A stretch of 64,000 nucleotides of DNA from Macrostomum lignano (taxonomy: Eukaryota): positions 62,001 to 126,000 of the forward strand of contig NIVC01001294.1 of assembly GCA_002269645.1 (NCBI GenBank), given 5' to 3'. This document shows, in pieces, positions 17,101 to 32,972 of the stretch. Each line of letters opens with the position of its first letter. Position 1 is the first letter of the stretch. The notes under the pieces are model-generated. The model ran no database searches, was not told the DNA's origin, and saw only the letters and a list, made by a program, of their open reading frames with translations. The translations under genes and the position numbers were made by a program.

Positions 17101-17125
17101 GCTGAACCAGAGTGGCGGGCGCTGA
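11119..17125 (+). CDS. GTF2F1: Transcription initiation factor IIF large subunit (RAP74)
   Basis: Exons 11119-11789 and 15619-17125, with a phase-2 join CG|C giving GALR-RFNPFNQPMQL. RAP74 motifs: YRIIVP, YGEGSAY, KKFKGSREGGITANAAYWVF, FEALPADDFYKF, RHFNSEEAEEEF; acidic linker; C-terminal winged helix IDESLIRHYLGRRPMT. Start uncertain: first in-frame ATG is 11257, or there is an unseen upstream exon. Confidence 0.92.
11845..15460. repeat. 3.6-kb 28-bp/24-bp minisatellite filling the GTF2F1 intron
   Basis: 28-bp GGGAGGGTGTCCGTCTGCAGTGTTGGAT to about 14040, then 24-bp GAGGGTATCCGCCTGCAGTGTTGT / GAAGGTGTCCGTCTGCAGTGTTGG. Confidence 0.97.
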
Positions 17126-18141
17126 TTTTTTAGTATAGTGGACTAGCGGATGCGCCCCCCTCTGAGGGACCGGCTGATGGCATTTTTGTGGCGTCTCTTT
17201 CTCCCGCCCCGTCACACTGATAGTTGTGACATTCTCGCCGTTGCACTTTCACCTGTTCTGGCCTATTCTATAACTCCTTTGCGCTCAGTTAAACAAGTTT
17301 TTTGCGCGCTAATTCAAAGTTTGCTGTCTTAGAATAATAAGCAGATTACTTTCTATCTTAGAAAGTCAGTCAGGGGCAGACGCTGGCAATAGTCAGTCCA
17401 AGGACTACGCAAGTAGGACGGGAAACTACGTGTCTACTGTGCCTAAAAATCATGAAAAGTTTTATGAATGTCAATAGAGCTATAAGAAGGCAAGACATAT
17501 CAAAAGATGAAGATTAGGCCGTCCTTCTATCGCAAGGAATGACAATTTTTGTGCTGAAAAAATGACAACCTATTATCTCGGTACAATATTGGACGGAGAA
17601 AAATCTTTCACCGAGTGCAAGAACCGATAGCATAGCAACTGCTAATATTAGTCTTCGGGATTGTTCTGCATGTCCTGTCATTGCAATGTCCTGTGTTTAT
17701 CAATACTCGGTAAATTCTGTTGCAGCACCGCAGATTTCTGTTAGGCTGAAGGCTTGACGCTTGTAAAATTTATTTTGCACCTCCATGTTTCCGCACACTT
17801 CATCCAACATGCTACTATTGCTACTAGACAGTTAAGTAGTGTGTTGATAATGTAAACAGGGTCTAATAATAGTTATTGTCTTGTCTTGCTTAACCTGTTT
17901 AATTATCCTGGCAAATACAACATACAAATATGCTAAGTAACAATGTATTAAAGGTGTTAGCTTACTGTATGTTAATTGGTCTACTGTGTTGTCTTCGTTC
18001 ATTCCGTTGTTGGCAGTCTAAAAGTCGAAAAAGTTTATAAATATTATTTTAACGCTTAAACCCGAACTAACTACTTGAATATTCCATCAGATAAGTAGTT
18101 TTGCAGCACATTGAAACTATTTTTATTCCAGCCAGCCGCTG

Positions 18142-19599
18142 ATGTACCGCCTGTACAGACAGGTGCCAGTCGCGGGCCGCTACCTGCTGCTGTGCCTGTA
18201 CCTGTGCCTGTGGGTGTTCGCCCTCTTCAACTACAGCAGCAGGTGCCGCTACTCGCAGCCGGACGTCTTCATTGAAGACTGGCCAGCCGAGGACTCAAGG
18301 CTGATGTCGGGCCGCTGCTATCTACGGCGGGACAGTATGCAGCTGCAGCCGCTGGATCTCCAACATGCACCTGAGCTGCATCATCTAGAGACTGCTCTGG
18401 CTGGTCCCGAAGTTCCGGCACAGATGAGGTTGCGTCCTGGGGGAAGCTGGGCTCCATCAAACTGCACCCCACTGCAACACGTAGCCGTGATGGTGGCCAT
18501 CAGGAATCGGGACTTTCACTTGCGGCTGCTGCTGAACCGGCTGCATCGGATGCTGAGAAGGCAGCTGATCAAGTACACTGTGTTTGTGGTTGAGCAGGTG
18601 AGCAATGCGTTAAGCAGTAACTTGAGCAGTTAAGCAGTGATTTGAGCAGGCAGTTGAGCAGTAAGCTGTGAATTGAGCAGTAAGCTGTGAATTAAGCAGT
18701 AAGTAGTGAGTTGAGCAGTAAGCAGTGTGTTGAGCAGGTAAGCAGTGAATTGAGCAGTAAGCAGTGAGTTGAGCAGTGAGCTGTGAACTGAGCAGGTGAG
18801 CAGGCAATTGAGCACTGTGTTTCAGCACGTAAATAGACTTAAGCAAATGAAGAGGCAGCTTTTAAAATCTACCCAGCCTCTGTGCCCCATCACCCAGACC
18901 GGACCGGAGCCCTTCAACCGAGGCATGTTGATGAACGTTGGCGTGGTGGAGGCCCTGAAGCTGGCCAGCTTTGACTGCTTCATCTTCCACGATGTGGACA
19001 TGATTCCCGAGCACGATCGGAATGTGTACCTGTGCGATGAGAACGCCAGGCACCTGGCATCCGCCATTGACGAGATGCGGTATCACGTGATGTTCTACAA
19101 CTACCTCGGCGCTGTGCTGAGGGAGTAGCTATGCCGATATGTATGGTTTTGACGTGTTAGTAAGCGGGATTAAAAGCAGTTCTCTTCCCATCGGTCGTGT
19201 GCAGCGATGAGCAGCAAGAACTTTTTTCGCATCAACGGCTTCTCCAACGTGTACTGGGGCTGGGGCAACGAGGACGACGACATCAGCGCCCGCACGATGG
19301 AGGCCGGCATGCTGGTGTCCCGTCCGCCGCTCACCCTCGGCCGCTACAAGATGGTGCGCCACCCCAAGGCCGTCCGCATCGAGTCGGCCTACAGCCAGTT
19401 CCGGCACTGGCGCGCTCGCCAGTTCGAAGACGGCGTGAGCTCGCTGGGTTCGGGCTCGTACTCGCTGCGCCTGATTGACAGGCAGCCGCTGTGCACCCGC
19501 CTGACTGTGCAGCTCAACGCCAGCCAGCACCGGATGCTGCCCGAGTGGCAGGCCAAGCCGGCCTCAATATGGTGGTTTCTGGGCTTCTATTATCTCTGA
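18142..19599 (+). pseudogene. GT7 beta-1,4-galactosyltransferase-like copy 1; intron-2 donor is GG instead of GT, so possibly non-functional
   Basis: Exons 18142-18597, 18898-19120, 19205-19599 by homology to copies 2 and 3. N-terminal TM anchor, PFNRGMLMNVG, FIFHDVD, WGWGNEDDD. Donor reads CTGA|GGGAGT versus CTGG|GTGAGT in the paralogs; read-through stops at 19126-19128. Confidence 0.7.
18598..18820. repeat. TGAGCAG-based short repeat in B4GALT copy 1 intron 1 (also 22998-23165 and 32071-32230)
   Basis: Units such as TTGAGCAGTAAGCAGTGA resemble the exon/intron junction TTGAGCAG|GTGAGCA. Confidence 0.85.
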
Positions 19600-19924
19600 G
19601 GCTGCGTGTGCTGTGCTTGTCTTGGCCCGCTTGCTGGCTTGCAGTGTTGGGCGACTCGAGAGAGCTTCTATCACATTTCGCGACGTAGTTCTGCTGTGTT
19701 ATTGGGCTTTTCTGTGTTTTGAGTTTGGTTGGGGTCGGAGGGCAGAGCTTATAGGCAGAGCTTATAGGCTTTGTTGGCCTTGCGGATCTGTGAAATCTGT
19801 CTTCTTTTATCTTTGTATATCAAGTATTATCAATAATACTGGTATTATTTTTCGCTGGTCACTAACTGACATAGATGCCTTAGTGGGGTTATGCCACCTG
19901 CTCACAAATCCTCGTTTGCTTGGA

Positions 19925-20155
19925 CACCAAGCCTCCCAGATCCTCAGTTGCTGGGGCAGCCTCCCAGATCTTCAGTTGCTGGGCCAGCCTCCCAGAGTGT
20001 CAGTTGCTAGGTCAGCCTCCCAGATCCTCAGTTGTTGGGTCAGCTTCCCAGATTCTCAGTTGCTGGGCCAGCCTCCTAAATCCTCAGTTGCTGGGCCAGC
20101 CTCCCAGATCCTTGCGGTTGCTGGGCCAGCCTCTCAGGTCCTCAGTTGCTGGGCC
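19925..20155. repeat. 28-bp minisatellite, same family as 60620-61810 in opposite orientation
   Basis: CCCAGATCCTCAGTTGCTGGGCCAGCCT, about 8 copies. Confidence 0.9.
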
Positions 20156-20328
20156 GCCCCGCCCCAAAACTCTTGGGTTTAAAGAATTGGCTAACTTTTT
20201 GCCAGCGCAGGTTTTCTGCACAGTGACAGACCGCAACTTGCATAGCCTGTCTGATTGACAGAACCTAATCTTACATAACTTCGTACGTACCGCTTTTTCA
20301 AGTCTTTTTTATTTTAACATTTTTAACT

Positions 20329-20490
20329 GGGGCTTGTAGTCTAGTGGTTAGAGCGTCGAACTCACGACTGGAAGGTCAGGGGTTCGATTCCCAATCCCAC
20401 TGGAACAATTTGTGTCCTTGAGCCTGACACTTAACTCTGCATTGCTTCAGTTCACTCAGCAGTAAAATGAGTGCCAGCATTAGCTGGGGT
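20329..20490 (+). mobile_element. tRNA-derived SINE with a CORE (MIR-like) domain
   Basis: A-box TAGTCTAGTGG, perfect B-box GGTTCGATTCC, then TTGTGTCCTTGAGCCTGACACTTAACTCTGCATTGCTTCAGTTCACTCAGCAGTAAAATGAG, which resembles the CORE consensus as I recall it (TGTGTGACCTTGGGCAAGTCACTTAACCTCTCTGTGCCTCAGTTTCCTCATCTGTAAAATGG). Confidence 0.75.
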
Positions 20491-21784
20491 AATTAAGGGT
20501 TTGTGTGGCGACCCCCCTTGGGTGTGCATATTTACTTTTTCATATCCAAATTGTCGGTATAAGTCAGTATAAGTCAGTTTCGCGTTTTTAGCCGGGATTT
20601 GTATTTACAGATTTGTTTACTATGGAAAATTTCATTCTGACCATCAGTTTAAGCCTTCTGTTTAATACTGAAAGCAGAGTAGTTTGCTGTGCAATTCGAG
20701 TTCCCTTGCTTCGGTTAGTTTGCATTTCTGTGATCCAAATTCTATTCAAAATATCTTTATAATTAGATGCTAAAATCATTGTGCAATTCAGTCTTTACGT
20801 TTTTGGTTTTATGATTTATTCCGGCAATATAATGCGACTATGGAATTCGCCGCGATCTCAAACCCTGTTACAACTATTGATTAATAATATTTACATATTC
20901 AATAATTATTATTGGTTTACTTCTTGAATCTCTCAAAATCTATCAGCTAGTCAACACTGGCTTCTGTCTTTTACAATTGTCAAAAATTACACATTATACT
21001 ACTCTATTTATAACCGGACTGCTATGAAATGTGCGATCGGTGTTCGTTGTTGACCTGTCATTTTTGTTTGGGCTTCTCTAGCTCCTTTATTCAACTAGGA
21101 TGATGAATCAGTTGTTGTGAGGTGGTAGTTTTAAAATAAGTTGTCTCATAGCAACTTCCAGCAAATTGACAGTTTCAGCAGGTTAGAATTTGTCTCTCTG
21201 AGATTTCACATAGAGGTCGCTCAATACAACATGATTTTAACATGCAAAATTGTGTTAAAAACGGCCAATTTAGTGACAAGCATTAAATTCTGCTCCATGA
21301 CGGCTATGCTTGGATATTATTGATTAATAATCCGTTAGTGTATCGCTAATGATAAAAATAATAATGATAAGCTAAACATTTGATGACCGCCCATTCGTGA
21401 GAGTTCACTTCAAATAGTTGTTTTTATTAGAATATAGTAGTGCATTGTGATTGTAATTAAGATCGTCTAAAGTTGTGATGCTAAATATAACTTACTGCAT
21501 GCTTAGTAATCAGTAGACAACAGTGACAATAGAATTTTTACTCTAATAAGCAAATATGACAACTGTACTGTAGAACTAAAAGGTTGTCACTAAAACAGGG
21601 CCTCGGGGACCGTTTTAATCAGCATTTTGCATGTTAAACTTACGTCGCGTGGAGTCAACCCTAAATTAATTTCAATTCACTTCATCTTGTAGGAAATTGA
21701 GTTTCTTGCCATTGGGTGTAAAAATGAGGGTGACCGATTTAAAAATATAAACCTTTGAAAAATATAAACAACCCTGCTAATCAC

Positions 21785-22295
21785 TAAGACACCCATCACT
21801 GAGACACCCATCACTGAGACACACATCACCCATCACTGAGACACCCATCACTGAGACACCCAGCATAGAAAACCCATCACTGAGACACACATCACCGAGG
21901 CACCCATCACTGAGACACATCACCGAGGCACCCATCACTGAGACACATCACCGAGGCACCCATCACTGAGACACACATCATCGAGGCACCCATCACTGAG
22001 ACACATCACCGAGGCACCCATCACTGAGACACACATCATCGAGGCACCCATCACTGAGACACACATCACTGAGACACCCATCACTGGAAACCCATCACTG
22101 AGACACACATCACCGAGGCACCCATCACTGAGACTCCCATCACTGGAAACCCATCACTGAGACACACATCATCGAGGCACCCTTCACTGAGACACACATC
22201 ACTGAGACACCCATCACTGGAAACCCATCACCGAGGCACCCATTACTGAGACACCCATCACTGAGACATCCATCACTGAGACACCCATCACTTGG
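21785..22295. repeat. About 16-bp minisatellite
   Basis: CACCCATCACTGAGAC and variants. Confidence 0.9.
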
Positions 22296-22544
22296 ACAGA
22301 AGTTGGGAGATTTCTAGAATTACGCAGGAGTAGTTTAAGCAGGCCTTGAATCAAAATTTTCTGTTACAATCATCGTCTTGCATGGCAGAATATTAGGCTA
22401 AGTCTCCGGCATCTACCTGTATTCAGTTGGGCCATGCATAGAGGACTTGATTACAAGAGGCGGCAAGCAAAGCAGCTGAGACCCGATATCCCTACTCTCT
22501 ATTTTGTCCCCACCAACAGCCGCTGACAGGGCCGCCGCTTCCCG

Positions 22545-23949
22545 ATGCGCGTCTGCTGGCACATGTCTGTCGCGGGCCGCTACCTGCTGCTGTGCCTGTA
22601 CCTGTGCCTGTGGGTGTTCGCCCTCTTTAACTACAGCAGCAGGTGCCGCTACTCGCAGCCGGACGTCTTCATTGAAGACTGGCCAGCCGACGACTCCAGG
22701 CTGAAGTCGGGCCGCTGTTACCTGCGGCGGGACAGCCTCCAGCTGCAGCCAATAGATATGCAAAATGCACCTGAGCTGCATCATCTAGAGACTGCTCTGG
22801 CTGGTCCCGAAGTTCCGGCACAGATGAGGTTGCGTCCTGGCGGAAGCTGGGCTCCATCAAACTGTACCCCACTGCAACACGTGGCCGTGATGGTGGCCTT
22901 CAGGAATCGGGACTTTCACTTGCGGCTGCTGCTGAACCGGCTGCATCGGATGCTGAGAAGGCAGCTGATCAAGTACACTGTGTTTGTGGTTGAGCAGGTG
23001 AGAAATGCGTTAAGCAGTAACTTGAGCAGTTGAGCAGGCAGTTGAGCAGTAAGCTGTGAGTTGAGCAGTAAGCAGTGAGTTGAGCAGATAAGCAGTGAGT
23101 TGAGCAGTAAGCTGTGAGTTGAGCAGTGAGCAGTGAATTGAGCAGGTGAGCAGGCAGTTGAGCACTGTGTTTCAGCACGTAAATAGACTTAAGCAAATGA
23201 AGAGGCAGCTTTTAAAATCTACCCAGCCTCTGTGCCCCATCACCCAGACCGGACCGGAGCCCTTCAACCGAGGCATGTTGATGAACGTTGGCGTGGTGGA
23301 GGCCCTGAAGCTGGCCAGCTTTGACTGCTTCATCTTCCACGATGTGGACATGATTCCCGAGCACGATCGGAATGTGTACCTGTGCGATGAGAACGCCAGG
23401 CACCTGGCATCCGCCATTGACGAGATGCGGTATCACGTGATGTTCTACAACTACCTCGGCGCTGTGCTGGGTGAGTAGCTATGCCGATATGTATGGTTTT
23501 GACGTGTTAGTAAGCGGGATTAAAAGCAGTTCTCTTCCCATCGGTTGTGTGCAGCGATGAGCAGCAAGAACTTCTTCCGCATCAACGGCTTCTCCAACGT
23601 GTACTGGGGCTGGGGCAACGAGGACGACGACATCAGCGCCCGCACGATGGAGGCCGGCATGCTGGTGTCCCGTCCGCCGCCCGCCCTCGGCCGCTACAAG
23701 ATGGTGCGCCACCCCAAGGCCGTCCGCATCGAGGGCGGCAACGAGTACTTCATGGCCTGGAGGGCCAGGCACTATGAGGACGGGCTGAACGCGCTGAGCA
23801 GGGCCTCGTACTCAGTGCTGAGTCGCCAGGCGATGCCTCTGTACACAAACATCTCTGTGCGGCTGTCCCGCCAGCGGCATCGAATAACGCCCGAGTGGCT
23901 GTCCAACTCGGACTCCGTATGGTGGTTTCTGCGATTCTACTATCCATAG
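22545..23949 (+). CDS. GT7 beta-1,4-galactosyltransferase-like copy 2 (356 aa)
   Basis: Exons 22545-22997, 23248-23470, 23555-23949; GT-AG, phases 0 and 1. TM anchor RYLLLCLYLCLWVFALF, DVD motif, WGWGNEDDD, metal-site YKMVRH, DGLNAL, PLYTNISV. Confidence 0.9.
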
Positions 23950-24029
23950 GCCGCCCTTTTTGACCCTGTCGAGTTGAGCTTTTGGCGGTGCGGTCCTAGC
24001 AACTGCATTAGTGCCCCAATCACGCGGGT

Positions 24030-24855
24030 GAATCGCCCATCAGCCTCACATGAGAATCGCCCATCAGCCTCACATGAGAATCGCCCATCAGCCTCGCATG
24101 AGAATCGCCCATCAGCCTCACATGAGAATCGCCCATCAGCCTCACATGAGAATCGCCCATCAGCCTCGCATGAGAATCGCCCATCAGCCTCACATGAGAA
24201 TCGCCCATCAGCCTCACATGAGAATCGCCCATCAGCCTCGCATGAGAATCGCCCATCAGCCTCACCTGAGAATCGCCCATCAGCCTCACCTGAGAATCGC
24301 CCATCAGCCTCCCCTGAGAATCGCCCATCAGCCTCACCTGAGAATCGCCCATCAGCCCCATCTGAGAATTGCCCATCAGCCTCACCTGAGAATCGCCCAT
24401 CAGACCCACCTGAGAATCGCCCATCAGACCCACCTGAGAATCGCCCATCAGCCCCACCTGAGAATCGCCCATCAGCCCCACCTGAGAATCGCCCATCAGC
24501 CCCACCTGAGAATCGCCCATCAGCCCCATCTGAGAATCGCCCATCAGCCTCACCTGAGAATCGCCCATCAGACCCACCTGAGAATCGCCCATCAGACCCA
24601 CCTGAGAATCGCCCATCAGCCTCCCCTGAGAATCGCCCATCAGCCTCACCTGAGAATCGCCCATCAGCCCCATCTGAGAATCGCCCATCAGCCTCACCTG
24701 AGAATCGCCCATCAGACCCACCTGAGAATCGCCCATCAGACCCACCTGAGAATCGCCCATCAGCCTCACCTGAGAATCGCCCATCAGCCCCACCTGAGAA
24801 TCGCCCATCAGCCTCACCTGAGAATCGCCCATCAGACCCACCTGAGAATCGCCTC
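24030..24855. repeat. 21-bp minisatellite, about 39 copies
   Basis: GAGAATCGCCCATCAGCCTCACAT changing to ...CACCT variants. Confidence 0.95.
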
Positions 24856-25329
24856 TAAATTACTGACAAAATCTTTCTTAATCCACTCTAGAGAGATTAT
24901 GAATACTTCCACCGAGAGATGCCGATATTGAAGTATTATTATATAAACCTACCTTTGATGTACTATAGCTCCAATTGCAATCGGAAGTATATTCCATTTT
25001 TTGTTTCGTGCAGCTTTGACTGTCCAGTTAATGCGAGTAAGTAATATTATTGATTACTTATCCCTGGTGCTCGGTACGTCAAATCGCAATATTATTTTAG
25101 GCTTTTCGCTTCCCTGAATTGGTAGTTTTTTGTATGTATTTTACTGCAATGTCGGCGCTGTACTGCTATTAATAAATTGAATTGTTTAAATATAAATGAT
25201 TTCTTGACGCTTCAATGTCATATTGATGTTTAGTTCACAGTTTTATGAAATTACTCAGCTTATGTAATTGTTAAGTGAATTAAAAAACCTTGCTTTGCTG
25301 GACATCGCTTCTTTGTTCATCGCTTATCG

Positions 25330-25985
25330 GGGGCGCAGATAAGGAGGGGGGTTGGGCGCAGATAAGGAGGGGGGTTGGGCGCAGATAAGGGGGTTGGGCG
25401 CAGATAAGGAGGTGGGTTGGGCGCAGATAAGGAGGTGGGTTGGGCGCAGATAAGGAGGGGGGTTGGGCGCAGATAAGGAGGGGGGTTGGGCGCAGATAAG
25501 GAGGGGGGTTGGGCGCAGATAAGGAGGGGGGTTGGGCGCAAATAAGGAGGGGGGTTGGACGCAGATAATGAGGGGGGTTGGGCGCAGATAAGGAGGGGGG
25601 TTGGACGCAGATAATGAGGGGGGTTGGGCGCAGATACTGAGGGGGGTTGGGCGCAGATAATGAGGGGGGTTGGGCGCAGATAAGGAGGGGGGTTGGGCGC
25701 AGATAAGGAGGGGGTTGGACGCAGATAAGGAGGGGGGGTTGGGCGCAGATAAGGAGGGGGTTGGACGCAGATAATGAGGGGGGTTGGGCGCAGATAATGA
25801 GGGGGGTTGGGCGCAGATAATGAGGGGGTTGGGCGCAGTTAAGGAGGGGGTTGGGCGCAGATACTGAGGGGGGTTGGGCGCAGATAATGAGGGGGTTGGG
25901 CGCAGATAAGGAGGGGGTTGGACGCAGATAATGAGGGGGTTTGGGCGCAGATACTGAGGGGGGTTGGGCGCAGATAATGAGGGTA
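25330..25985. repeat. 23-bp G-rich minisatellite
   Basis: GGGGGGTTGGGCGCAGATAAGGA, about 28 copies; G-runs compatible with quadruplex formation. Confidence 0.95.
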
Positions 25986-25999
25986 AGAGCACGACTGAG

Positions 26000-27326
26000 G
26001 AAAGAGGGTAAAATTGAATTGCAAATCAGAAGTGAGCAAGAGGGAGAGAGAAAAGAAAGATGGGACAGAGGGAAGCAGTAAACAGAGGGACGACCGGACG
26101 AGGCAGTTTAACTGGAGAGATGACCAGACGACTTAGAAAGTTGCGACATCCAGAGCCATTATGCTTCTGACGAATGCGCCTGGATCCGAAAACCACCCTG
26201 CAAAGTGTCTCGCAGTTACTGTCATGCACATTCCGCTGACTCCTAAGCACTCACTCAGGGTGTAGAGGCCCTGACTTTCTCATCGATTGTCAGGCATGGT
26301 ACACGTGTTGTATTTTCTGCTTTTGTCCGTGCAGACCGAAGACCGGGTGGTTTGGGTTCGGGTACTGGACTGCCCAGAGCTTGCCGAGTGTGATAGGAAG
26401 GAGAGCGGCGACCCCTGAGGCGTACAGAAATTCGTCCAGCTCTCGCGAGGGAGATGCGAATGATGATTGATGAGGCTGCGATCATGTAGCCACTCAGCAG
26501 CACCAGAGCGGTGAACACGGGCCTGGAGGCACGCAGACACTTCGCAGACTCTAGTGAAGACTGCGACTGGAGGAAAGAATTTAAAAGAGGATGAGAAATA
26601 AATGAGAAGTAAAGACTATCTTACCGGGAGAGGCTAACTCGATGAGCTCACGAACGATTGCGCGTATTTCATCACTTTCAATGATTTTCACAAGTACTTG
26701 AAGGGCTAGCGGGGAGAGTAGGCTAGCACGAAAGCCGGGCGTGGGCCGTGCACGCACCTAGATACTGTACATGGTGGGATAGAGAGCAGGGGGCTGGGTT
26801 GGGGCTAAGGGCCGCTAAGCCACACAAGGGCTGGGGAGGGGGGGCAAAACTCAGTTGAAGGACGATAGAAAAAAAAAGAGGGGGAAGGCTAGCCAATCAG
26901 GTGCCTCCGCGGGGACATGATTGGACTGGCCCAAACGAAAGAGAAACTAAACGGGGACAGACAGCCAATGAAAGTAAAACTACGAGAAAACTAAAATGAT
27001 AAACAAGAATGGTGGCTGAAGACAGGGGGAAGGCAGACCAGAATGATCAAGTTGCAGGGAGAGGAGAGGTGGAGCGCAAGGGTCGGGGCAAGGGCACTGT
27101 GAAGCGCAGCTCACGACACACTCTCTGTCTTGGAGGTTGGCCGGCACTCCGGGGCTTGATTGTGTTGCTTTAACCCTCGAGTCGGACTCTTTAACCCGGC
27201 TACTGGCCTGTGAGCTTCTCTGCATGGTAGCTTACCACACGTTTGAATTTCTGCTTGAACAGTGTGTGCGCAGTGTTGGTTTTGAACTAGGTCCACGACT
27301 TTTGTCTGCCACAAATTGACTATCAA
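26000..27326 (-). mobile_element. Possible 3' end of a CR1/L2-type LINE plus long 3' UTR
   Basis: Minus strand at about 27326-27230 reads IVNLWQTKVVDLVQ then, after a frameshift, NTAHTLFKQKFKR, reminiscent of LINE ORF2 C-termini. Weak match. Confidence 0.3.
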
Positions 27327-27506
27327 TCTTAATAACCCAACCTAAACCTAATTACCACAACCGTCGCAGTCTGAGCTAGGACCTCTAGGAGTGGTGGTAC
27401 CGTTGTATAAGGCCGTAAACTATTCGAGTTTAATGGAATATTATTTAAAGGCCGAACTTTAAATGTACTCATAGGCGTAGGAAAGTTTCAAAAAGTGGGG
27501 GGCCAA

Positions 27507-28008
27507 TGAAGTGACACATTTTGGTCCAAAAAGTTCCCATCCAGATTGAATGTATTTTAACCAATGAATGCGCTCCAAATAGCAAGCTGAGGACACGACC
27601 AATGAAAAGTAGCTACGTACCATCCAATGCGATCAAGACTGAAAAGTACTATAAAAGCCCATGTCAACCAAGCAAGAAGCTCGCCTCCTTTTTCCTTAGC
27701 TCCACAATAGACTGAACCTTCGGTTCACCCAAACAACCAGAACCCATTGTAACTTGAACCAATTGAGCTTCTTATTTGGAACTCCATCTTAGACATTATA
27801 CTTTGTAAGATAACATAACAGATTGTGACCATCAAATACAACAGTCTGTAAGTTACCATCAAGTGTTTGCATCATCAGGAAAAGTCAGTTGAATCCGCCG
27901 CCTCAGCTAGTTATTTGGCTCTCACATTGATATTTGAAGTAGACATAGAGCCATACAAGTGACGGACCAGAAGAACGATAATACCAACATCTTATTTAAA
28001 ATATTTCA
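27507..28008 (+). mobile_element. LTR-like sequence (502 bp)
   Basis: TGAA...TTCA ends, three CCAAT boxes, TATAAAAG at about 27649, and a tRNA-complementary PBS-like TGGTTCCCTGAC starting 1 nt after the terminal CA. No AATAAA seen. Confidence 0.6.
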
Positions 28009-28009
28009 C

Positions 28010-28075
28010 TGGTTCCCTGACTGGGAGTCGAACCCGGGCCGCCTGGGTGAGAGCCAGGAATCCTAACCGCTAGAC
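28010..28075 (-). pseudogene. Retrocopy of mature tRNA-Glu(CTC), positions 10-76 including CCA
   Basis: Minus strand GTCTAGCGGTTAGGATTCCTGGCTCTCACCCAGGCGGCCCGGGTTCGACTCCCAGTCAGGGAACCA. Intact anticodon arm, encoded CCA, 5' acceptor strand missing. Confidence 0.88.
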
Positions 28076-28585
28076 TGTGTCACTTCACCAGGTCCAGTGG
28101 CGGATTAGGGGGGGGGCGCATAGGGCAGGGCGCACGCCCCCATCGAGTTAGATTTTTATATATGGAAAATGCACATTATCATGTAGCGATTCTTTTCAGA
28201 ATCCGTCTTGTCAGCACTCATTTTAGCGTCGCATGCACTCATTTTAGCGTCGCATGCACTCATTTTAGCGCCGCAGGCACTCATTTTGGTGCTGCAGGCG
28301 CTGTTTTGTCGCCCTGCAGCAAAATGCATTCATGCAAAGCAGCAAAAATCAAAAATAAGCAAAAAGTCTACATTTTACATTTAAAATGTGGAGGGGTCAG
28401 ATACCATTACTGCCCCCCCATTTTAAAAAGTGGGGGGCATGGCCCCACTGTCCACACCTTCCTAAGCCTATGAGTGTACTTCCTTAACTTTGAATCTGCT
28501 GCACATCGACACAGAGGGATAATTTTTGTTATTTCTTCAAATTGATGGTCTATTCAACAGCAGGAATGCCAAGCCACTTTTCCGC

Positions 28586-30288
28586 CCGTCGAACTACCAA
28601 GAGGGGGAATCCCCCCCAGACAATTTTTTTGCTGCGCCGGAACGGAGCAGCGCAAGCACACGGAATTCGAGAACACGGGCTAACTTTTTGTTGCGCACCT
28701 TCTCAAACAAGGATCAAGTCGCCAGCCCTTCGGACCGTCGAGATATTCGACGATTCTGCTAGAAGGTCGGATTTTTCCCATAAGCGCTAGTGTATTCAGT
28801 ACACCCCTGTGCGCCAATCAGCACTTCGTCTCAGCGCAGCCTTGCCAAGTCTCCAAATTTCATCAGCACGTCGACCACATGTGTCTGCATCAGCTCTGAC
28901 TTCGTTGGTCACTAGCCTTCTCTCAGGCGGAGCTTCTGGACCTTCAACAGGTGGCACCAAGTGACTATGAACACCCTGATGCGAATTTCTCGAGTTTTGC
29001 TGATCAAGCCTCGACAGTGGGCAAAATTCAACTGCTAGGTATCCTCAGCTAGTCTCTCGAGCATTCCGTCATCACCCGGACGCCGTCGGCACCTTCAACA
29101 GATTACAGCAGGTGACTATGGACACCTTGATGCGAATTTCTATAGTTTCGCCGATCAAGCCTCGACAGTGGGAAAGCCTCAACTGCTGGACATCCTCAGC
29201 TAGTCTCTCGAGCATTCCGTCACCACCCCGACGCCGTCGGCTCCTTCAACAGATGACACCAGGTGACTATAGACACGCTGTTGTGAATTTCTTTGATGTC
29301 GCTCACCAGCATCAATAATGGACAAACTTTCATTTCTGGTCGTTCTCAACTAGACTCTCAAATAGTCTATCATCACCAGACATGATTAAGTAAACGTGAT
29401 GACGTAATTTGTTAATTACACTGTAAATTGAACAGAATCTTCGCGAAGAAAAAAATACTAGAAATTATCCAATTTTCTGTGTGGAATGAATATCAATTCA
29501 TAATATACTGAATCTCTAGTCTTCTGTCCTAAAAGTTGCTAAAATTGTTTAAAATAAAAAAAATCATCTCTTTTGGGTGTTTATAGTCGGTTTCGTCTCC
29601 TTGAAGGTGCCGACGACGGCAGAATGACAACCGGATGCTTGAAAAACTAGTTGAGGATACCTACCAGTAGAGGTTTGCCCATTATTGAAGATTGATTAGA
29701 ACAATCTAACATATTTGCAACAGGATGTTCATAATCACCTGGTGTAATCTGTTGAAAGTGCCGATGGCGTCGGGGTGATGATGGAATGCTTGAGAGACTA
29801 GCTGAGGATGTCCAGCAGTTGAGGCTTTCTCACTGTCGAGGTCGAGGCCTGATCGGCGAAACTAGAGAAATTCGCATCAGGGTGTTCATACGAGCTAGTC
29901 ACCTCGTGCCACCCGTTGAAGGTCCAGAAGCTCCACCTGGGAGAAGGCTAGTGACCAACGAAGTCAGAACTGATGCAGACACATGTAGTTGACGTGCTGA
30001 TGAAATTTGGAGACTTGGCAAGGCTGCACTGAGGCGCAGTGCTGATTGGCGCACAGGGGTGTACTGAATACACTATAGCGCTTATGGGAAAAATCCGACC
30101 TTCTAGCAGAATCGTCGAATATCTCGACGGTCCGGAGGGCTGGGGCGACTTGATTCTTGTTTGAGAATGTGCGCAACAAAAAGCTAGCCCGTGTTCTCGA
30201 ATTTCGTGTGCCTGCGTTGCTCCGTTCCGGTGCAGCAAAAAATTGTCAGGGGGGTGGAAATTCCCCCCCTCTCTTGGTAGTTCTACTG
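28586..30288. mobile_element. Foldback-type element with about 700-800 bp inverted arms
   Basis: About 28586-29390 is the reverse complement of about 29590-30288; ORFs 28542+ and 29948- share NGA.QAH.IREHGL.FCCA.SQTRIKSP. Termini CCGTCGAACTACCAAGAG and CAGTAGAACTACCAAGAG; about 140-bp internal subrepeats; AT-rich spacer. No TSD found. Confidence 0.8.
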
Positions 30289-31596
30289 TTAATATCAAAG
30301 TTCATATCAGGCCTAAACAGATTTGCTCAGCCTGTAAATGAACGCTTCAATTAAGAAACTTTTTTTATTGGAAATTATACAATTATACGTGTGAAACAAA
30401 AAATATTTAGAGAAACAATACACCGCTCTTTGCATTGAGTATCAAATACTTCAAAATCGCTTCTATGCTTTCTCGCAAGTAGCCCATCGCTCATACGCGT
30501 ACATCTAACATGTACGAGTATTCTACTGAAGGCACCTGGCACAGTGCCGGCTGTCATAAACACCTTAATTTTTAAATAATCTACAAAATCACTTTTAAAA
30601 AACCAGTATCTTGGTAACTTGTCAACACAAAAATGTTTTTGTTACGTTTTCTATTATTTTAGATCAAAACAATTCAATTAAGTGATATTTTGCACTCCAA
30701 ATATAACTTGAGAAGCTATACAAGCGTATATGGTCATTCTAAATAGCCGAATTAAACTTTAAATGAAAATGTTTTTAATAGCCTTTCTGGTACCAATTTT
30801 GAATTCTACTCGTACCATCATCCCGTTCGGTGCACGCGGCACCTCTTTTTGCATATGCTTCAATTATTTCAATAATTCTGCTCTGTTCTCTCTGCACAGC
30901 AGCAGTATTTCAAGCTTTCTACCTATCTGTTCGATAGCTCGGTGCCTCGCAATGGTTTGACGCGATTCAAAACATTGCTGTCGCATGAGTCTTTTTGTCA
31001 GCTTGCTTCTTGCAACGTGGGCCCACACAAGGCTCGGCATGTTTAGAAGCGTCTAGCAGAATGCACTGCCTGTCTCCCGTTGATGAAACAGAGCTCTCTT
31101 ATTGGTCCGTAGCCCCACAATTGCAACTGTAAAACTATATTTTTATTTAAAAAGAAACAGAAGAAACAACGACCCCGTCTTTCCATATCGCGCTTCAAAA
31201 CCGAGATCGTATTTTCTATTCGAGTTGACCGTGTGCAAGGCAGGTAAGTCTAATGTACGCATGACAGCATTCAGAGATGCCAAACCTTTTGCTGCCCATT
31301 TTTCAACAAGTTATCCGTTGAATACTAAGCGAGCCTATATTAACTAAATCTATCTTTGCTAAAGTCTGGAGGCAGGTCTGGCGCCTTGTCTCCTGTCTGA
31401 GAGGTGAGGAACAGTAAGTTATCCCATATCCTTGTGGCAGCACAAAAATTGACAGACAAAGGTAAAGTACATGTACGCACCTGTGTACTGAATCTGATGT
31501 GTGGCAAATGCCCCCCCCCCCATCCAAACCGTCAGAAAACGAAGCTGAACTCTGCCCTTGCCGTGCTGCAAGTCAAGCGAAGCTCTTTACCCCGCC

Positions 31597-32972
31597 ATGT
31601 TCTGCCGCGGGTACCCGATACGCGTCAGCAGGCACATGTCTGTCGCGGGCCGCTACCTGCTGCTGTGCCTGTACCTGTGCCTGTGGGTGTTTGCCCTCTT
31701 CAACTACAGCAGCAGGTGCCGCTACTCAGAGCCGGACGTCTTCATTGAAGACTGGCCAGCCGACGACTCCAGGCTGAAGTCGGGCCGCTGTTACCTGCGG
31801 CGGGACAGCCTCCAGCTGCAGCCAATAGATATGCATAATGCACCTGAGCTGCATCATCTGGAGACTGCTCTGGCTGGTCCCGAAGTTCCGGCACAGATGA
31901 GGTTGCGTCCTGGCGGAAGCTGGGCTCCATCAAACTGTACCCCACTGCAACACGTAGCCGTGATGGTGGCCTTCAGGAATCGGGACTTTCACTTGCGGCT
32001 GCTGCTGAACCGGCTGCATCGGATGCTGAGAAGGCAGCTGATCAAGTACACTGTGTTTGTGGTTGAGCAGGTGAGCAATGCGTTAAGCAGTAACTTGAGC
32101 AGGTGAGCAGTCATTTGAGCAGGCAGCTGATCAAGTACACTGTGTTTGTGGTTGAGCAGGTGAGCAATGAAGTTAAGAATTAAGAAGTAAGTTCAGCAGT
32201 TCAGCAGGTGAGCAGTGAGTTGAGCAGGTAAAGAGGCAGCTTTTAAAATCTTCTCTGCCGCATCACCCAGACAGGACCGGAGCCCTTCAACCGAGGCATG
32301 CTGATAAATGTTGGCGTGGTGGAGGCACTGAAGCTGGCCAGCTTTGACTGCTTCATCTTCCACGATGTGGACATGATTCCCGAGCACGATCGGAATGTGT
32401 ACCTGTGCGATGAGAACGCCAGGCACCTGGCATCCGCCATTGACGAGATGCGGTATCACGTGATGTTCTACAACTACCTCGGCGCTGTGCTGGGTGAGTA
32501 GCTATGCCGATATGTATGGTTTTGACGTGTTAGTAAGCGGGATTAAAAGCAGTTCTCTTCCCATCGGTCGTGTGCAGCGATGAGCAGCAAGAACTTCTTC
32601 CGCATCAACGGCTTCTCCAACGTGTACTGGGGCTGGGGCAACGAGGACGACGACATCAGCGCCCGCACGATGGAGGCCGGCATGCTGGTGTCCCGTCCGC
32701 CGCTCACCCTCGGCCGCTACAAGATGGTGCGCCACCCCAAGGCCGTCCGCATCGAGGGCGGGTACACGCACTTTATGGCCTGGCGGGCCAGGCACTATGA
32801 GGACGGGCTGAACGCGCTCAGAAAGAACTCGTACACGATCGTCAGTCGCCAGGCGATGCCTTTGTACACAAACATCTCAGTGCGGCTGTCGCTCTCCCGG
32901 CACCAGATGAAGCAGGAGTGGCTGTCAAAAACAGACTCCGTTTGGTGGTTTCTACGATTCTATTATCCGTAG
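31597..32972 (+). CDS. GT7 beta-1,4-galactosyltransferase-like copy 3 (363 aa)
   Basis: Exons 31597-32070, 32271-32493, 32578-32972; GT-AG introns; all GT7 motifs as in copy 2. Confidence 0.9.

What the first reader, a model, noticed from the sequence alone, without database searches (positions are those of the whole stretch)
18142..32972. Glycosyltransferase triplet with a homogenised body and a sharply bounded variable acceptor-binding tail
Seen: from VAGRY to HPKAVRIE the copies are about 97% identical in protein (9 differences in about 275 aa, copy 1 vs 2) and the 84-nt intron 2 is nearly identical. Right after CGCATCGAG (19383, 23733, 32756), mid-exon, the last 71 aa fall to 30/71 identity (1 vs 2) and 54/71 (2 vs 3), without indels or stops and with DG, SY, PL and WWFL kept. 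Known: in bovine B4GALT1 the loop after His347 (346-365; R359, F360, I363) builds the acceptor site. By my alignment the most variable triplet (YSQ, NEY, YTH) maps to about 360-362. Inference: gene conversion keeps the donor and catalytic core uniform while selection preserves different acceptor modules, a constant-plus-variable glycosylation cassette.
Basis: partly seen in the sequence, partly recalled or inferred. Interest (0 to 1): 0.75.

Follow-up and report, generated by a model that had tools for sequence, protein, structure and literature searches.

The report
Partly homogenised flatworm galactosyltransferase gene triplet
Three neighbouring glycosyltransferase genes of the flatworm Macrostomum lignano keep about 80% of their coding length (plus both introns) nearly identical by copying from one another, while their last 71 codons, which correspond to the family's old last exon and its sugar-acceptor lid, stay old and different; this is a clean example of a known process, and the idea that the tails give different specificities is still untested.

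Summary
The window is M. lignano contig NIVC01001294.1. It carries three 3-exon GT7/B4GALT-type genes on the + strand (18142-19599, 22545-23949, 31636-32972).

- **The break.** From codon 10 to the CGCATCGAG break the copies differ at 1.7-3.7% of coding sites, and intron 2 differs by 1-2 of 84 nt. The last 71 codons are 30/71, 31/71 and 54/71 identical.
- **Gene conversion is well supported.** Paralog dS rises from 0.05-0.10 in the body to 0.5-1.1 in the tail. The orthologue from another species shows no such step (0.60 vs 0.66). In two sister arrays of the same polyploid genome, intron 2 groups by array while the tails group by position.
  - The break lies 5 nt from a phase-2 intron conserved in a mollusc, a nemertean and a vertebrate, so the tail is the ancestral last exon.
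  - Copy 1 in this window has lost its intron-2 GT donor.
  - The main copy 2 vs copy 3 change-point is 62 nt further downstream.
  - One sister array has copy 1 overwritten by copy 2, tail included.
- **Selection.** The tails are under purifying selection. Selection against conversion, and different acceptor specificity, remain untested.

Verdict: a new member of a known kind, of moderate interest.

The parts
18142..19599 (+). Copy 1 (c1). Exons 18142-18597, 18898-19120 and 19205-19599. A GT7 beta-1,4-glycosyltransferase with a type II membrane layout.
   Evidence: Six-frame translation, DNA alignment and splice landmarks. Pfam GT7N plus GT7C was found on the c2 paralog. The intact positional counterpart A1 is P0005.
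18169..19383 (+). Homogenised block of c1: codon 10 to codon 285, with introns 1 and 2.
   Evidence: Coding differences from c2 are 25/831 and from c3 31/831. Intron 2 differs by 1-2/84. The 5' flank upstream of 18169 cannot be aligned between copies.
18318..18364 (+). c1-specific island inside the homogenised block (stem region, LQPLDLQH vs LQPIDMQN).
   Evidence: 7 sites (exon-1 positions 150-196) are shared by W1 and A1 and differ from all c2 and c3 copies.
19120..19122 (+). Lesion at the c1 intron-2 splice donor: CTGA|GGGAGT instead of CTGG|GTGAGT.
   Evidence: All seven other copies in the three arrays keep GGTGAGT. Read-through meets a TAG after 2 codons.
19384..19599 (+). c1 tail (71 codons plus stop), the most diverged of the three.
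   Evidence: It differs from c2 at 85/216 nt, with dS 0.65 and dN 0.52. It differs from its positional counterpart A1 at 3/216 nt, all synonymous.
19390..19398 (+). Variable triplet YSQ of c1.
   Evidence: Tail codons 3-5. They align to bovine B4GALT1 357-359 and lie at the start of the lid helix in the model.
22545..23949 (+). Copy 2 (c2). Exons 22545-22997, 23248-23470 and 23555-23949. It has the ancestral-like tail and is intact in all three arrays.
   Evidence: The orthologue in another species (L002/P0004) has a c2-type tail. c2 matches 18/19 conserved tail columns.
22569..23733 (+). Homogenised block of c2.
23734..23949 (+). c2 tail. The NEY triplet is at 23740-23748. The position of the lost ancestral phase-2 intron is between 23738 and 23739.
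31636..32972 (+). Copy 3 (c3). Exons 31636-32070, 32271-32493 and 32578-32972. An alternative upstream ATG lies at 31597.
   Evidence: P0002 starts at the upstream Met.
31642..32756 (+). Homogenised block of c3, with c3-specific sites at exon-2 positions 3, 36 and 39.
32757..32972 (+). c3 tail. The YTH triplet is at 32763-32771. Differences from c2 come in patches.
   Evidence: It differs from c2 at 40/216 nt, with dS 0.52 and omega 0.28. The patches are at tail nt 6-18, 63-87 and 136-177.
32034..32169 (+). Duplicated exon-1-end/donor segment in c3 intron 1: a 47-nt copy 89 nt downstream, giving a second identical donor.
   Evidence: The motif is found at 32034 and 32123 and is absent from the sister copy A3.

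Best explanation
These are three old tandem paralogs of a GT7 beta-1,4-glycosyltransferase of the B4GALT1-6 type. Each has its own promoter, its own first 9 codons and its own 3' flank.

A block of about 1.2 kb is kept 96-99% identical by recurrent non-reciprocal copying between the three genes (interlocus gene conversion). The block runs from codon 10 to codon 285 and includes both introns.

The last 71 codons lie outside the converted block. They correspond to the ancestral last exon of the family: the lost intron site is 5 nt from the break. By homology with B4GALT1 they encode the second half of the lid loop and its helix, which forms the acceptor pocket. They also encode the last two beta-strands and a conserved hydrophobic C-terminal extension.

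The tails are at least roughly as old as the split from another Macrostomum species, and each is now under purifying selection. The c1 tail went through a burst of replacements, mostly at positions that vary across the family. The locus therefore encodes enzymes with one shared donor-binding and catalytic core and three different lid/C-terminal modules.

- Shown here: the conversion, its limits, the age of the tails and the constraint on them.
- Inferred: that the tails change acceptor or partner specificity.
- Why the boundary holds: in my view mainly because conversion tracts cannot run into about 45%-identical sequence, with purifying selection on each tail as a second factor that has not been demonstrated.
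For: **Identity of the genes.** Pfam finds GT7N and GT7C. The c2 protein matches bovine and human B4GALT1 at E = 1e-58, and the DVD and WGWGxEDDD motifs and the His347 equivalent are kept. The AlphaFold models have pLDDT 92. The c1-type model matches closed B4GALT1 (1o0r) with TM 0.93 and rmsd 1.8 A.

**Conversion.**
- Body dS between paralogs is 0.05-0.10, against 0.5-1.1 in the tail.
- Third-position differences are 10-22/277 in the body and 21-33/71 in the tail.
- The breakpoint falls exactly at the break, with 0/2000 permutations reaching it.
- Between c2 and its orthologue in another species there is no step: dS is 0.60 in the body and 0.66 in the tail, and omega is 0.13 and 0.14.
- The window (W) and contigs NIVC01000566.1 (A) and NIVC01002009.1 (B) are the three subgenomic copies of the array. 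Intron 2 has 2 substitutions and 2 indels that are fixed in all copies of an array and differ between W and A/B. The tails group by position instead: W1-A1 differ at 3/216 nt and W2-A2 at 4/216.
- Further variants shared only within one array, at 5 body sites (exon 1 positions 250, 255 and 297; exon 2 position 31; exon 3 position 137), show short tracts after the arrays split.
- Flanks cannot be aligned between paralogs but are 93-98% identical between arrays.

**The tail is the old last exon.** A phase-2 intron lies in the codon aligned to c2 Gly287 in Tubulanus, Haliotis and Spea. It is absent in M. lignano and Clonorchis.

**Constraint on the tails.**
- Orthologous tails differ by 9 synonymous and 3 non-synonymous changes (P = 0.0003).
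- c1 changes avoid family-conserved columns: 4/19 conserved columns changed against 37/52 variable ones (P = 0.0003).
- c1 keeps all invariant tail columns.

**Role of the lid.** Reviews describe the acceptor site as forming at the C-terminal end of the long flexible loop, with Arg359, Phe360 and Ile363 making the N-acetyl pocket (PMC4202792, PMC7565966).
Against: No functional data exist for any copy, so the donor and the acceptor are both inferred.

In this window c1 has lost its intron-2 donor and carries F->I in the FRNR motif. c3 has a duplicated donor segment. In array A, c3 has a 20-nt frameshifting deletion. In array B, c1 is overwritten by c2 from codon 10 to about 1 kb past the stop. 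Distinct tails are therefore not indispensable in every subgenome.

Omega for the c1 tail against the others is 0.5-0.8, and about 1 on its own branch. In a neutral simulation, P(no stop) is 0.06 and P(identity >= observed) is 0.04, so the constraint on c1 is modest.

Body dS between paralogs (0.05-0.10) is about the same as dS between arrays (0.03-0.08). Full-length homogenisation is therefore not continuous, and recent events are short.

The identity of the comparison species (Logan run SRR28338165) is unknown.
Confidence: 0.72

Rival explanations
1. Conversion tracts do enter the tail, but they are removed by selection because the three tails confer different acceptor specificities. On this view the locus is an adaptive constant-plus-variable glycosylation cassette.
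For: The tails are under purifying selection, and c1 replacements avoid conserved columns. The NEY/YTH patch of c2 and c3 is flanked on both sides by near-identical sequence and is kept in both arrays. The patch sits at the start of the lid helix, next to the Arg359/Phe360 equivalents.
Against: There is no test of specificity and there are no population data. Array B carries a c1 whose tail was replaced by the c2 tail. W1, W3 and A3 are damaged. The 44-nt identical stretch after the patch is also conserved in the other species (3/44 differences), so it does not prove that tracts pass through the patch.
Confidence: 0.3
2. A passive boundary without functional partition. One or a few old conversion events fixed the limits of the block. 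Later tracts simply stop where homology ends. c1 and c3 are redundant copies that are slowly being lost in a neopolyploid genome.
For: c1 vs c2 differ at 25 of the first 45 tail nt, and the flanks cannot be aligned, so there is no homology to carry a tract. The 5' limit of the block is just as sharp and lies where homology ends. Only c2 is intact in all three arrays, and only a c2-type orthologue was found elsewhere. Omega on the c1 tail branch is about 1.
Against: c1 and c3 tails keep an open frame with no indel at dS 0.5-1.1. They show 9:3 synonymous to non-synonymous changes between arrays, and c1 spares conserved columns. This argues that both were functional until very recently.
Confidence: 0.3
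3. A ghost-intron barrier. When the copies first diverged, the last intron was still present. A fast-diverging intron stopped conversion tracts, so the last exon evolved separately. The intron was lost later, leaving a sharp boundary in the middle of an exon.
For: The break is 5 nt upstream of a phase-2 intron position conserved in a nemertean, a mollusc and a vertebrate, and c2 and c3 first differ exactly at that position. My rough estimate of the chance that a breakpoint lies within 5 nt of one of about 5 ancestral intron sites in 1070 nt is 0.05.
Against: Clonorchis also lacks this intron. The three tails share Macrostomum-specific features, such as the H(R/Q)(M/I)xxEW motif. Parsimony therefore puts the intron loss before the duplications. 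The scenario would otherwise need three precise losses, or a loss spread by conversion without converting the tail.
Confidence: 0.12
4. No conversion at all. The body is identical because of strong purifying selection, or because the assembler collapsed or mis-joined repeats.
For: The catalytic core is highly conserved in the family. The Mlig_3_7 assembly is known to be error-prone in copy number.
Against: Synonymous sites and both introns are homogenised. The same gene shows dS 0.6 against the other species. Three independent contigs show the same three-gene layout with the same tails.
Confidence: 0.02

Closest known systems
Bovine and human beta-1,4-galactosyltransferase 1 (B4GALT1; PDB 1o0r, 1nf5, 6fwt)
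   Same: Same fold: TM 0.93 and rmsd 1.8 A to the closed form. The HDVD and WGWGxEDDD motifs and the Met344/His347 equivalents are kept. Tyr is kept at the position of donor-selecting Tyr289. Phe is kept at the position of Phe360.
   Different: Identity is about 35%. The sequence lacks three residues in the lid helix region (Ile363-His365 in the HMMER alignment). It has a 3-residue insert after DGLNAL and a C-terminal extension of about 25 residues ending WWFLRFYYP. That extension is shared with mollusc and nemertean 'B4GALT3-like' proteins and is absent from the bovine B4GALT1 chains aligned. Activity was not tested.
Partial concerted evolution in tandem arrays, as in Trypanosoma brucei tandem gene arrays (Jackson 2007, PMC1855330). 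From my own knowledge: the human gamma-globin pair HBG1/HBG2, with a sharply bounded converted block, and the Siglec-11/16 paired receptors, with a converted 5' part and distinct tails.
   Same: Homogenisation and differentiation occur within one locus. Converted blocks have discrete limits. Paralogs are more alike than their positional counterparts inside the block, and the reverse holds outside it.
   Different: Here the unconverted part is the C-terminal catalytic-lid module of a glycosyltransferase. The limit lies inside an exon, at a lost intron site. The comparison is between subgenomes of a neopolyploid rather than between species.
Variable-exon plus constant-exon glycosyltransferase clusters: UGT1A, UGT2A and GCNT2 (Li and Wu 2007, PMC1885805)
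   Same: The outcome is a family of enzymes with one shared donor-side part and several alternative substrate-side parts, encoded in a tandem array.
   Different: In those clusters the constant part is physically single and is shared by splicing. They evolve by birth-and-death with little gene conversion. Here each gene has its own copy of the constant part, kept alike by conversion, and the variable part is 3'-terminal.

Membership tests
Glycosyltransferase family 7 (B4GALT1-6-type beta-1,4-glycosyltransferases) | Pfam Glyco_transf_7N and Glyco_transf_7C domains above the gathering score | tested here: met
   PF13733 scores 152 bits (cut-off 27) and PF02709 scores 84 bits (cut-off 23) on c2.
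Glycosyltransferase family 7 (B4GALT1-6-type beta-1,4-glycosyltransferases) | Catalytic and metal-binding motifs: DVD, WGWGxEDDD, FNR, and the Met344/His347 equivalents | tested here: met
   HDVD, WGWGNEDDD, FNRG and KMVRH are present in all three copies and aligned to B4GALT1. They are invariant columns in 46 homologues. W1 alone has I for F in the FRNR motif.
Glycosyltransferase family 7 (B4GALT1-6-type beta-1,4-glycosyltransferases) | GT-A fold of the B4GALT1 catalytic domain, including the C-terminal lid | tested here: met
   The AlphaFold models have pLDDT 92. Foldseek finds 1o0r with TM 0.93-0.94 and rmsd 1.7-1.8 A, which is closer than the fit to open forms (rmsd 3.0 A). This is a prediction, not a solved structure.
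Glycosyltransferase family 7 (B4GALT1-6-type beta-1,4-glycosyltransferases) | Transfer of Gal (or GalNAc/GlcNAc) from a UDP-sugar in beta-1,4 linkage | not testable with these tools
   Tyr at the Tyr289 position suggests a Gal donor, by a rule known from B4GALT1 work (my own knowledge). No assay was possible.
Interlocus gene conversion / concerted evolution | Silent sites and introns are homogenised between paralogs whose flanks and other coding parts are old | tested here: met
   Body dS is 0.05-0.10 and tail dS is 0.5-1.1. Intron 2 differs by 1-2/84. The flanks cannot be aligned.
Interlocus gene conversion / concerted evolution | Inside the block, paralogs of one array share variants that their positional counterparts in a sister array lack; outside the block the tree follows position | tested here: met
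   In intron 2, 4 characters are fixed by array. Several exon sites are shared only within one array. The tails differ at 3-4/216 nt between positional counterparts against 40-91/216 between paralogs.
Interlocus gene conversion / concerted evolution | No equivalent step in divergence between true orthologues (control for local mutation rate or constraint) | tested here: met
   For c2 vs L002, dS is 0.60 in the body and 0.66 in the tail, and omega is 0.13 and 0.14.
   Between arrays there are 9 synonymous and 3 non-synonymous changes (P = 0.0003). c1 spares conserved columns (P = 0.0003). The c1 evidence is weak on its own: 3 synonymous and 0 non-synonymous changes.
   One such haplotype exists: B1, with a 2.3-kb c2 tract over c1. 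Its frequency and fitness are unknown, and no population data were available.
   Only positional homology to the B4GALT1 lid is available.
Variable-exon/constant-exon cluster (UGT1A or GCNT2 type) | One shared set of constant exons, spliced to alternative variable exons | tested here: not met
   Each copy has its own full set of three exons, its own 5' flank and its own stop. The single 14.8-kb public gene model is a chimera of the three genes.

The most novel reading that the evidence does not exclude
The ancestral last exon of B4GALT genes, which encodes the second half of the lid and the C-terminal strands, behaves as an evolutionary module that outlives its intron. In Macrostomum it is the unit exempt from gene conversion. 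The array would then be a true constant-core/variable-lid glycosyltransferase cassette, held at a 'ghost' exon junction by selection for different acceptors or protein partners. That would reach by conversion what UGT1A and GCNT2 reach by alternative splicing.
Probability: 0.15. Interest if true: 0.7.

Novelty: new member of a known kind. Interest (0 to 1): 0.42.

Why it matters
The locus is a compact and well-controlled natural example of conversion acting on one part of a gene while another part stays old. The three subgenomic arrays and a cross-species orthologue serve as controls. The boundary falls in a structurally understood enzyme, exactly where the acceptor-forming lid begins.

If the tails do differ in specificity, the locus would offer ready-made chimeras for mapping acceptor determinants in invertebrate B4GALT enzymes. 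It would also show a second genetic route to 'constant plus variable' glycosyltransferases.

On the practical side, the public annotation merges the three genes into one model. The near-identical bodies will also mislead read mapping, RNAi and in situ probe design, and expression counts in this model flatworm, unless tail-specific sequence is used.

Tried and rejected
1. **A shifted boundary in arrays A/B.** A2 and B2 start the tail with Ser, as c1 does. I rejected this as a shift: their codon is AGC, one change from the GGC of W2, and not the TCG of c1.
2. **A micro-conversion inside the c2/c3 tail.** Tail nt 19-62 show 0-1 differences between c2 and c3. I left this open, because the orthologue from the other species is also nearly unchanged there (3/44), so constraint explains it equally well.
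3. **GC-biased conversion.** GC3 does not differ between body and tail (0.79-0.81 vs 0.78-0.86).
4. **Other copies or fragments in the window.** tblastn finds only the three genes.
5. **c1-type or c3-type orthologues in other species.** The protein search returned only M. lignano entries and one c2-type transcript.
6. **An intron near the 5' limit of the block.** Clonorchis has a 32-nt intron about 4 codons from the aligned position. The N-terminal alignment is too uncertain to use, and Tubulanus and Spea lack that intron. I did not pursue it.
7. **A trans-splice acceptor at the c1 5' limit (CCAG|TCG).** I considered this from the sequence alone. The frame does not fit, so I dropped it.
8. **Literature.** Searches for gene conversion in M. 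lignano, or in B4GALT or other glycosyltransferase tandem arrays with a conserved boundary, found no description of this locus.
9. **A failed search.** One paper search failed on a syntax error, and one script did nothing useful.

Full report
**What is there.** The window is part of Macrostomum lignano contig NIVC01001294.1 of assembly GCA_002269645.1 (Mlig_3_7). Locus L009, fetched through protein P0123, is identical to window 8133-42972 over all 34,840 bases.

The finding's span holds three genes on the + strand, each with three exons:

| Copy | Exon 1 | Exon 2 | Exon 3 |
|---|---|---|---|
| c1 | 18142-18597 | 18898-19120 | 19205-19599 |
| c2 | 22545-22997 | 23248-23470 | 23555-23949 |
| c3 | 31636-32070 | 32271-32493 | 32578-32972 |

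tblastn finds no further copy in the window. The proteins, of 350-357 residues, have a short cytoplasmic end, one membrane span, a stem and a GT7 catalytic domain. Pfam finds Glyco_transf_7N and Glyco_transf_7C. The best solved relatives are bovine and human B4GALT1 at E = 1e-58, and the DVD, FNR and WGWGxEDDD motifs and the Met/His metal ligands are in place. The closest proteins outside M. lignano are 'B4GALT3-like' proteins of molluscs and nemerteans, at about 50% identity.

**Check of the observation.**
- From VAGRY to RIE the proteins differ at 10, 11 and 5 of 277 residues.
- The last 71 residues are 30/71 (c1 vs c2), 31/71 (c1 vs c3) and 54/71 (c2 vs c3) identical, without indel or stop.
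- Intron 2 is 84 nt in all three copies, with 1-2 differences.
- In the DNA alignment, similarity between c1 and the other copies begins abruptly at 18169 (22569 in c2, 31642 in c3). It ends abruptly after CGCATCGAG at 19383, 23733 and 32756. Sequence upstream of the block and downstream of the stop codons cannot be aligned.
Coding differences are 3.0-3.7% before it and 42-45% after it, and 0 of 2000 permutations reach that score.

Four corrections are needed.
1. For c2 vs c3 the best breakpoint lies 62 nt further on. The NEY/YTH patch (tail nt 6-18, 6 differences) is an island followed by 44 nt with 0-1 differences. The remaining c2 vs c3 differences come in patches.
2. The body is a mosaic. 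It holds a c1-specific island at 18318-18364 and three c3-specific sites in exon 2.
3. In the HMMER alignment, c2 His278 is bovine His347. The break follows the residue aligned to Glu354, the variable triplet aligns to 357-359 and the conserved Phe aligns to Phe360.
4. The intron-2 donor of c1 reads CTGA|GGGAGT where all other copies read CTGG|GTGAGT.

**Is it gene conversion?** Four lines of evidence say yes.
1. By Nei-Gojobori estimates, paralog dS is 0.05-0.10 in the body and 0.52-1.09 in the tail. Third-position differences are 10-22/277 in the body and 21-33/71 in the tail. Both introns can be aligned and intron 2 is almost identical, which protein-level selection cannot explain.
2. There is a cross-species control. 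A 1148-nt intronless contig from Logan run SRR28338165 (L002, protein P0004) encodes a c2-type protein. Its species is unknown; by similarity it is presumably another Macrostomum. Against c2 it shows dS 0.60 in the body and 0.66 in the tail, with omega 0.13 and 0.14. The tail is therefore neither hypermutable nor poorly constrained. The step at the break exists only between paralogs.
3. The same assembly holds two more versions of the array: A on NIVC01000566.1 and B on NIVC01002009.1. Their flanks are 93-98% identical to the window. This fits the report that about 70-85% of Mlig_3_7 is present in three paralogous copies, with about 2% SNP divergence (PMC10733133).
   - In the tails, copies group by position: W1-A1 differ at 3/216 nt and W2-A2 at 4/216, against 85/216 for W1-W2.
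   - In intron 2, copies group by array. Two substitutions and two indels are fixed in W1, W2 and W3 on one side and in A1, A2, A3, B1 and B2 on the other.
   - Variants at five further body sites are shared only within one array: W1 with W2 at one site, W2 with W3 at one, and A1 with A3 at three.
   - This is the signature of concerted evolution. It shows that short tracts were exchanged after the arrays separated.
4. The c2, c3 and other-species tails are about equally distant from one another (36, 40 and 49 differences in 213 nt), and c1 is far from all of them (83-89). The duplications are therefore about as old as, or older than, that species split. Yet the bodies differ by only dS 0.05-0.10, against 0.6 to the other species.

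Collapse by the assembler is excluded as the cause, because three contigs give the same layout and the same tails.

**What the tail is.** I mapped the exons of relatives. In the nemertean Tubulanus (L005), the gastropod Haliotis (L007) and the frog Spea (B4GALT3-like, L008) a phase-2 intron interrupts the codon aligned to c2 Gly287. The junctions read TC|A in Tubulanus, GG|A in Haliotis and AG|G in Spea. In M. lignano coordinates that site lies between tail nt 5 and 6, at 19388|19389, 23738|23739 and 32761|32762. It is 5 nt after the c1 break, and it is exactly where c2 and c3 first differ.

M. lignano and the fluke Clonorchis (L006) lack this intron. The 'tail' is therefore the ancestral last exon of the family, and the 'mid-exon' boundary is a former exon junction. 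My rough estimate of the chance of such a coincidence is 0.05 (about 5 ancestral intron sites, plus or minus 5 nt, in 1070 nt).

Structurally, AlphaFold models of the intact c1-type (P0005) and c2-type (P0001) proteins are confident, with pLDDT 92 and pTM 0.9. The tail is modelled at pLDDT of about 80-98 in both. The c1-type model superposes on closed, substrate-bound bovine B4GALT1 (1o0r) with TM 0.93 and rmsd 1.8 A. The fit to open forms is worse, at rmsd 3.0 A. The variable triplet sits at the N-terminal end of the helix that follows the break.

In B4GALT1 the acceptor site forms at the C-terminal end of the long flexible loop, and Arg359, Phe360 and Ile363 make the N-acetyl pocket (PMC4202792 and PMC7565966). 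After the two last strands, the flatworm proteins carry an extension of about 25 residues ending WWFLRFYYP. This extension is shared with mollusc and nemertean relatives.

**Are the tails maintained by selection?** Partly shown.
- Between positional counterparts in arrays W and A, the three tails differ by 9 synonymous and 3 non-synonymous changes. A neutral expectation gives 24% synonymous, so P = 0.0003. For c1 alone the count is 3 to 0.
- c2 and c3 match 18 of 19 tail columns that are at least 70% conserved in 42 outgroup proteins. c1 matches 14 of 19.
- c1 changes hit 4/19 conserved columns against 37/52 variable ones (P = 0.0003). c1 keeps every invariant tail column.
- The c1 tail is clearly accelerated. 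Relative-rate counts are 12:2 and 10:1 against c2 (P = 0.01). dN is 0.51 to all other tails. Omega is 0.5-0.8 pairwise and about 1 on its own branch. In a neutral simulation of 82 substitutions, P(no stop) is 0.06 and P(identity at least as high as observed) is 0.04.

The c1 tail therefore changed a great deal but not freely. That fits a shift of function followed by constraint, or a long relaxation that stopped short of decay.

**What argues against an indispensable three-tail system.** Each array has a non-c2 copy that is damaged or replaced.
- In the window, c1 has lost its intron-2 donor and has F->I in the FRNR motif. It carries 11 private changes in all.
- In the window, c3 has a 47-nt exon-end/donor segment duplicated 89 nt downstream, which offers a second donor that would lead to a stop.
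- In array A, c3 has a 20-nt deletion that shifts the frame and removes DSVWWFLRFYYP.
- In array B, the first gene keeps the c1 promoter and first 9 codons. From codon 10 to about 1 kb beyond the stop (2.3 kb) it is identical to the neighbouring c2, tail included.

Only c2 is intact in all three arrays, and c2 is the copy with the ancestral-like tail and a known orthologue. In a neopolyploid such losses are expected under redundancy, so they do not disprove different functions. They do show that the barrier at the break can be crossed and that the result persists in the assembled genome.

**Most likely mechanism.** The paralogs are old. A conversion-competent block of about 1.2 kb is limited on both sides by sequence too different to pair. 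At the 3' side, 25 of the first 45 nt differ between c1 and c2. Once set, such limits maintain themselves.

The position of the 3' limit at a former exon junction may have three causes:
- Chance.
- A module effect: the last exon encodes a separable lid/C-terminal unit on which selection acts.
- A real former intron barrier. This is less likely, because Clonorchis also lacks the intron and the three tails share Macrostomum-specific motifs, which places the loss before the duplications.

The functional reading is one donor-binding and catalytic core with three lids. It is reasonable from B4GALT1 structure-function knowledge but is untested.

**Comparison with known systems.** The proteins meet every sequence and fold criterion of GT7/B4GALT that could be tested here. 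The evolutionary pattern meets the criteria for interlocus gene conversion. Partial concerted evolution with sharp limits is well known. One example is the tandem arrays of T. brucei (PMC1855330). From my own knowledge, others are the human gamma-globin pair and the Siglec-11/16 paired receptors.

Glycosyltransferase clusters with variable and constant parts exist (UGT1A, UGT2A, GCNT2). They share one physical set of constant exons by splicing, and they evolve with little conversion (PMC1885805). This locus fails that criterion, because each gene has its own exons. I found no paper describing this locus.

**Verdict.**
- The acceptor-module part is plausible and untested.
- The selection-against-conversion part is unproven and partly contradicted.
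- The locus is a new member of a known kind.
- The ghost-intron coincidence and the three-subgenome control add some interest.

Noticed in passing
window 19120-19122 and 18499: Copy 1 of this array has lost the GT of its intron-2 donor (GG, with the -1 G changed to A). It also carries F->I in the conserved FRNR motif. Its counterparts in the two sister arrays are intact at both sites. It is probably a very recently inactivated copy, unless the assembly is wrong here.
   Followed up: partly
window 32034-32080 and 32123-32169: In copy 3, the last 37 nt of exon 1 plus the first 10 nt of intron 1 are duplicated 89 nt downstream, inside intron 1. This creates a second identical splice donor, and using it would lead to a stop. 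The sister copy A3 lacks the duplication.
   Followed up: partly
window 18133-32972: The public annotation (PAA69754.1, BOX15_Mlig003056g1) merges the three genes into one 14,840-nt model, which joins the c1 N-terminus, a c2-like exon 1 and the c3 tail. UniProt models A0A1I8I476, A0A1I8JG69 and A0A1I8GXA9 are similar fusions. The near-identical bodies evidently confuse transcript-to-genome mapping.
   Followed up: partly
window 19388|19389, 23738|23739 and 32761|32762; loci L005 (~2685-2764), L007 (~2306-2596), L008 (~12874-12990): A phase-2 intron conserved in Tubulanus, Haliotis and Spea B4GALT genes maps 5 nt after the break. M. lignano and Clonorchis have lost it, together with the two introns before it, which is a 3'-biased loss.
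   Followed up: yes
L003 2445-4747 (contig NIVC01002009.1): In sister array B the first gene keeps the c1 promoter and first 9 codons. From there it is identical to the neighbouring c2 through body, tail and about 1 kb of 3' flank. The tract ends in a minisatellite. It is a 2.3-kb conversion, or a mis-assembly.
   Followed up: partly
L004 ~19620-19650 (contig NIVC01000566.1): Copy 3 of sister array A has a 20-nt deletion that shifts the frame after ...EWLSKT and removes the conserved WWFLRFYYP end.
   Followed up: partly
window 18598-18897, 22998-23247 and 32071-32270: Intron 1 of every copy is a minisatellite of roughly 14-nt GAGCAGTAAGCAGT-like units. Its length varies: 300, 250 and 200 nt in this array, and 602, 183 and 111 nt in array A.
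   Followed up: no
window 23886-24950, 25320-26004, 21798-22352 and 15005-15555: Long minisatellites surround the genes. A 24-nt unit starts inside the last codons of c2 and runs about 1 kb past its stop. A 23-nt unit lies further on, where the B1 tract ends. Repeats at 15-nt spacing lie upstream of c2. A 24-nt unit lies within the span of the upstream TFIIF-alpha gene model (11128-17125).
   Followed up: no
window 60613-61807: A GC-rich array of about 28-nt units is 84-89% similar to a repeat that sits between c1 and c2 in sister arrays A and B. That repeat is absent from the c1-c2 spacer of this window.
   Followed up: no
C-termini of c1-c3 (window 19570-19596, 23920-23946, 32943-32969) and proteins P0006-P0028: A hydrophobic C-terminal motif WWF(L/F)xFY(Y/F)P, about 25 residues beyond the end of the B4GALT1-type domain, is conserved from molluscs and nemerteans to flatworms in this 'B4GALT3-like' subfamily. 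I know of no function assigned to it.
   Followed up: no
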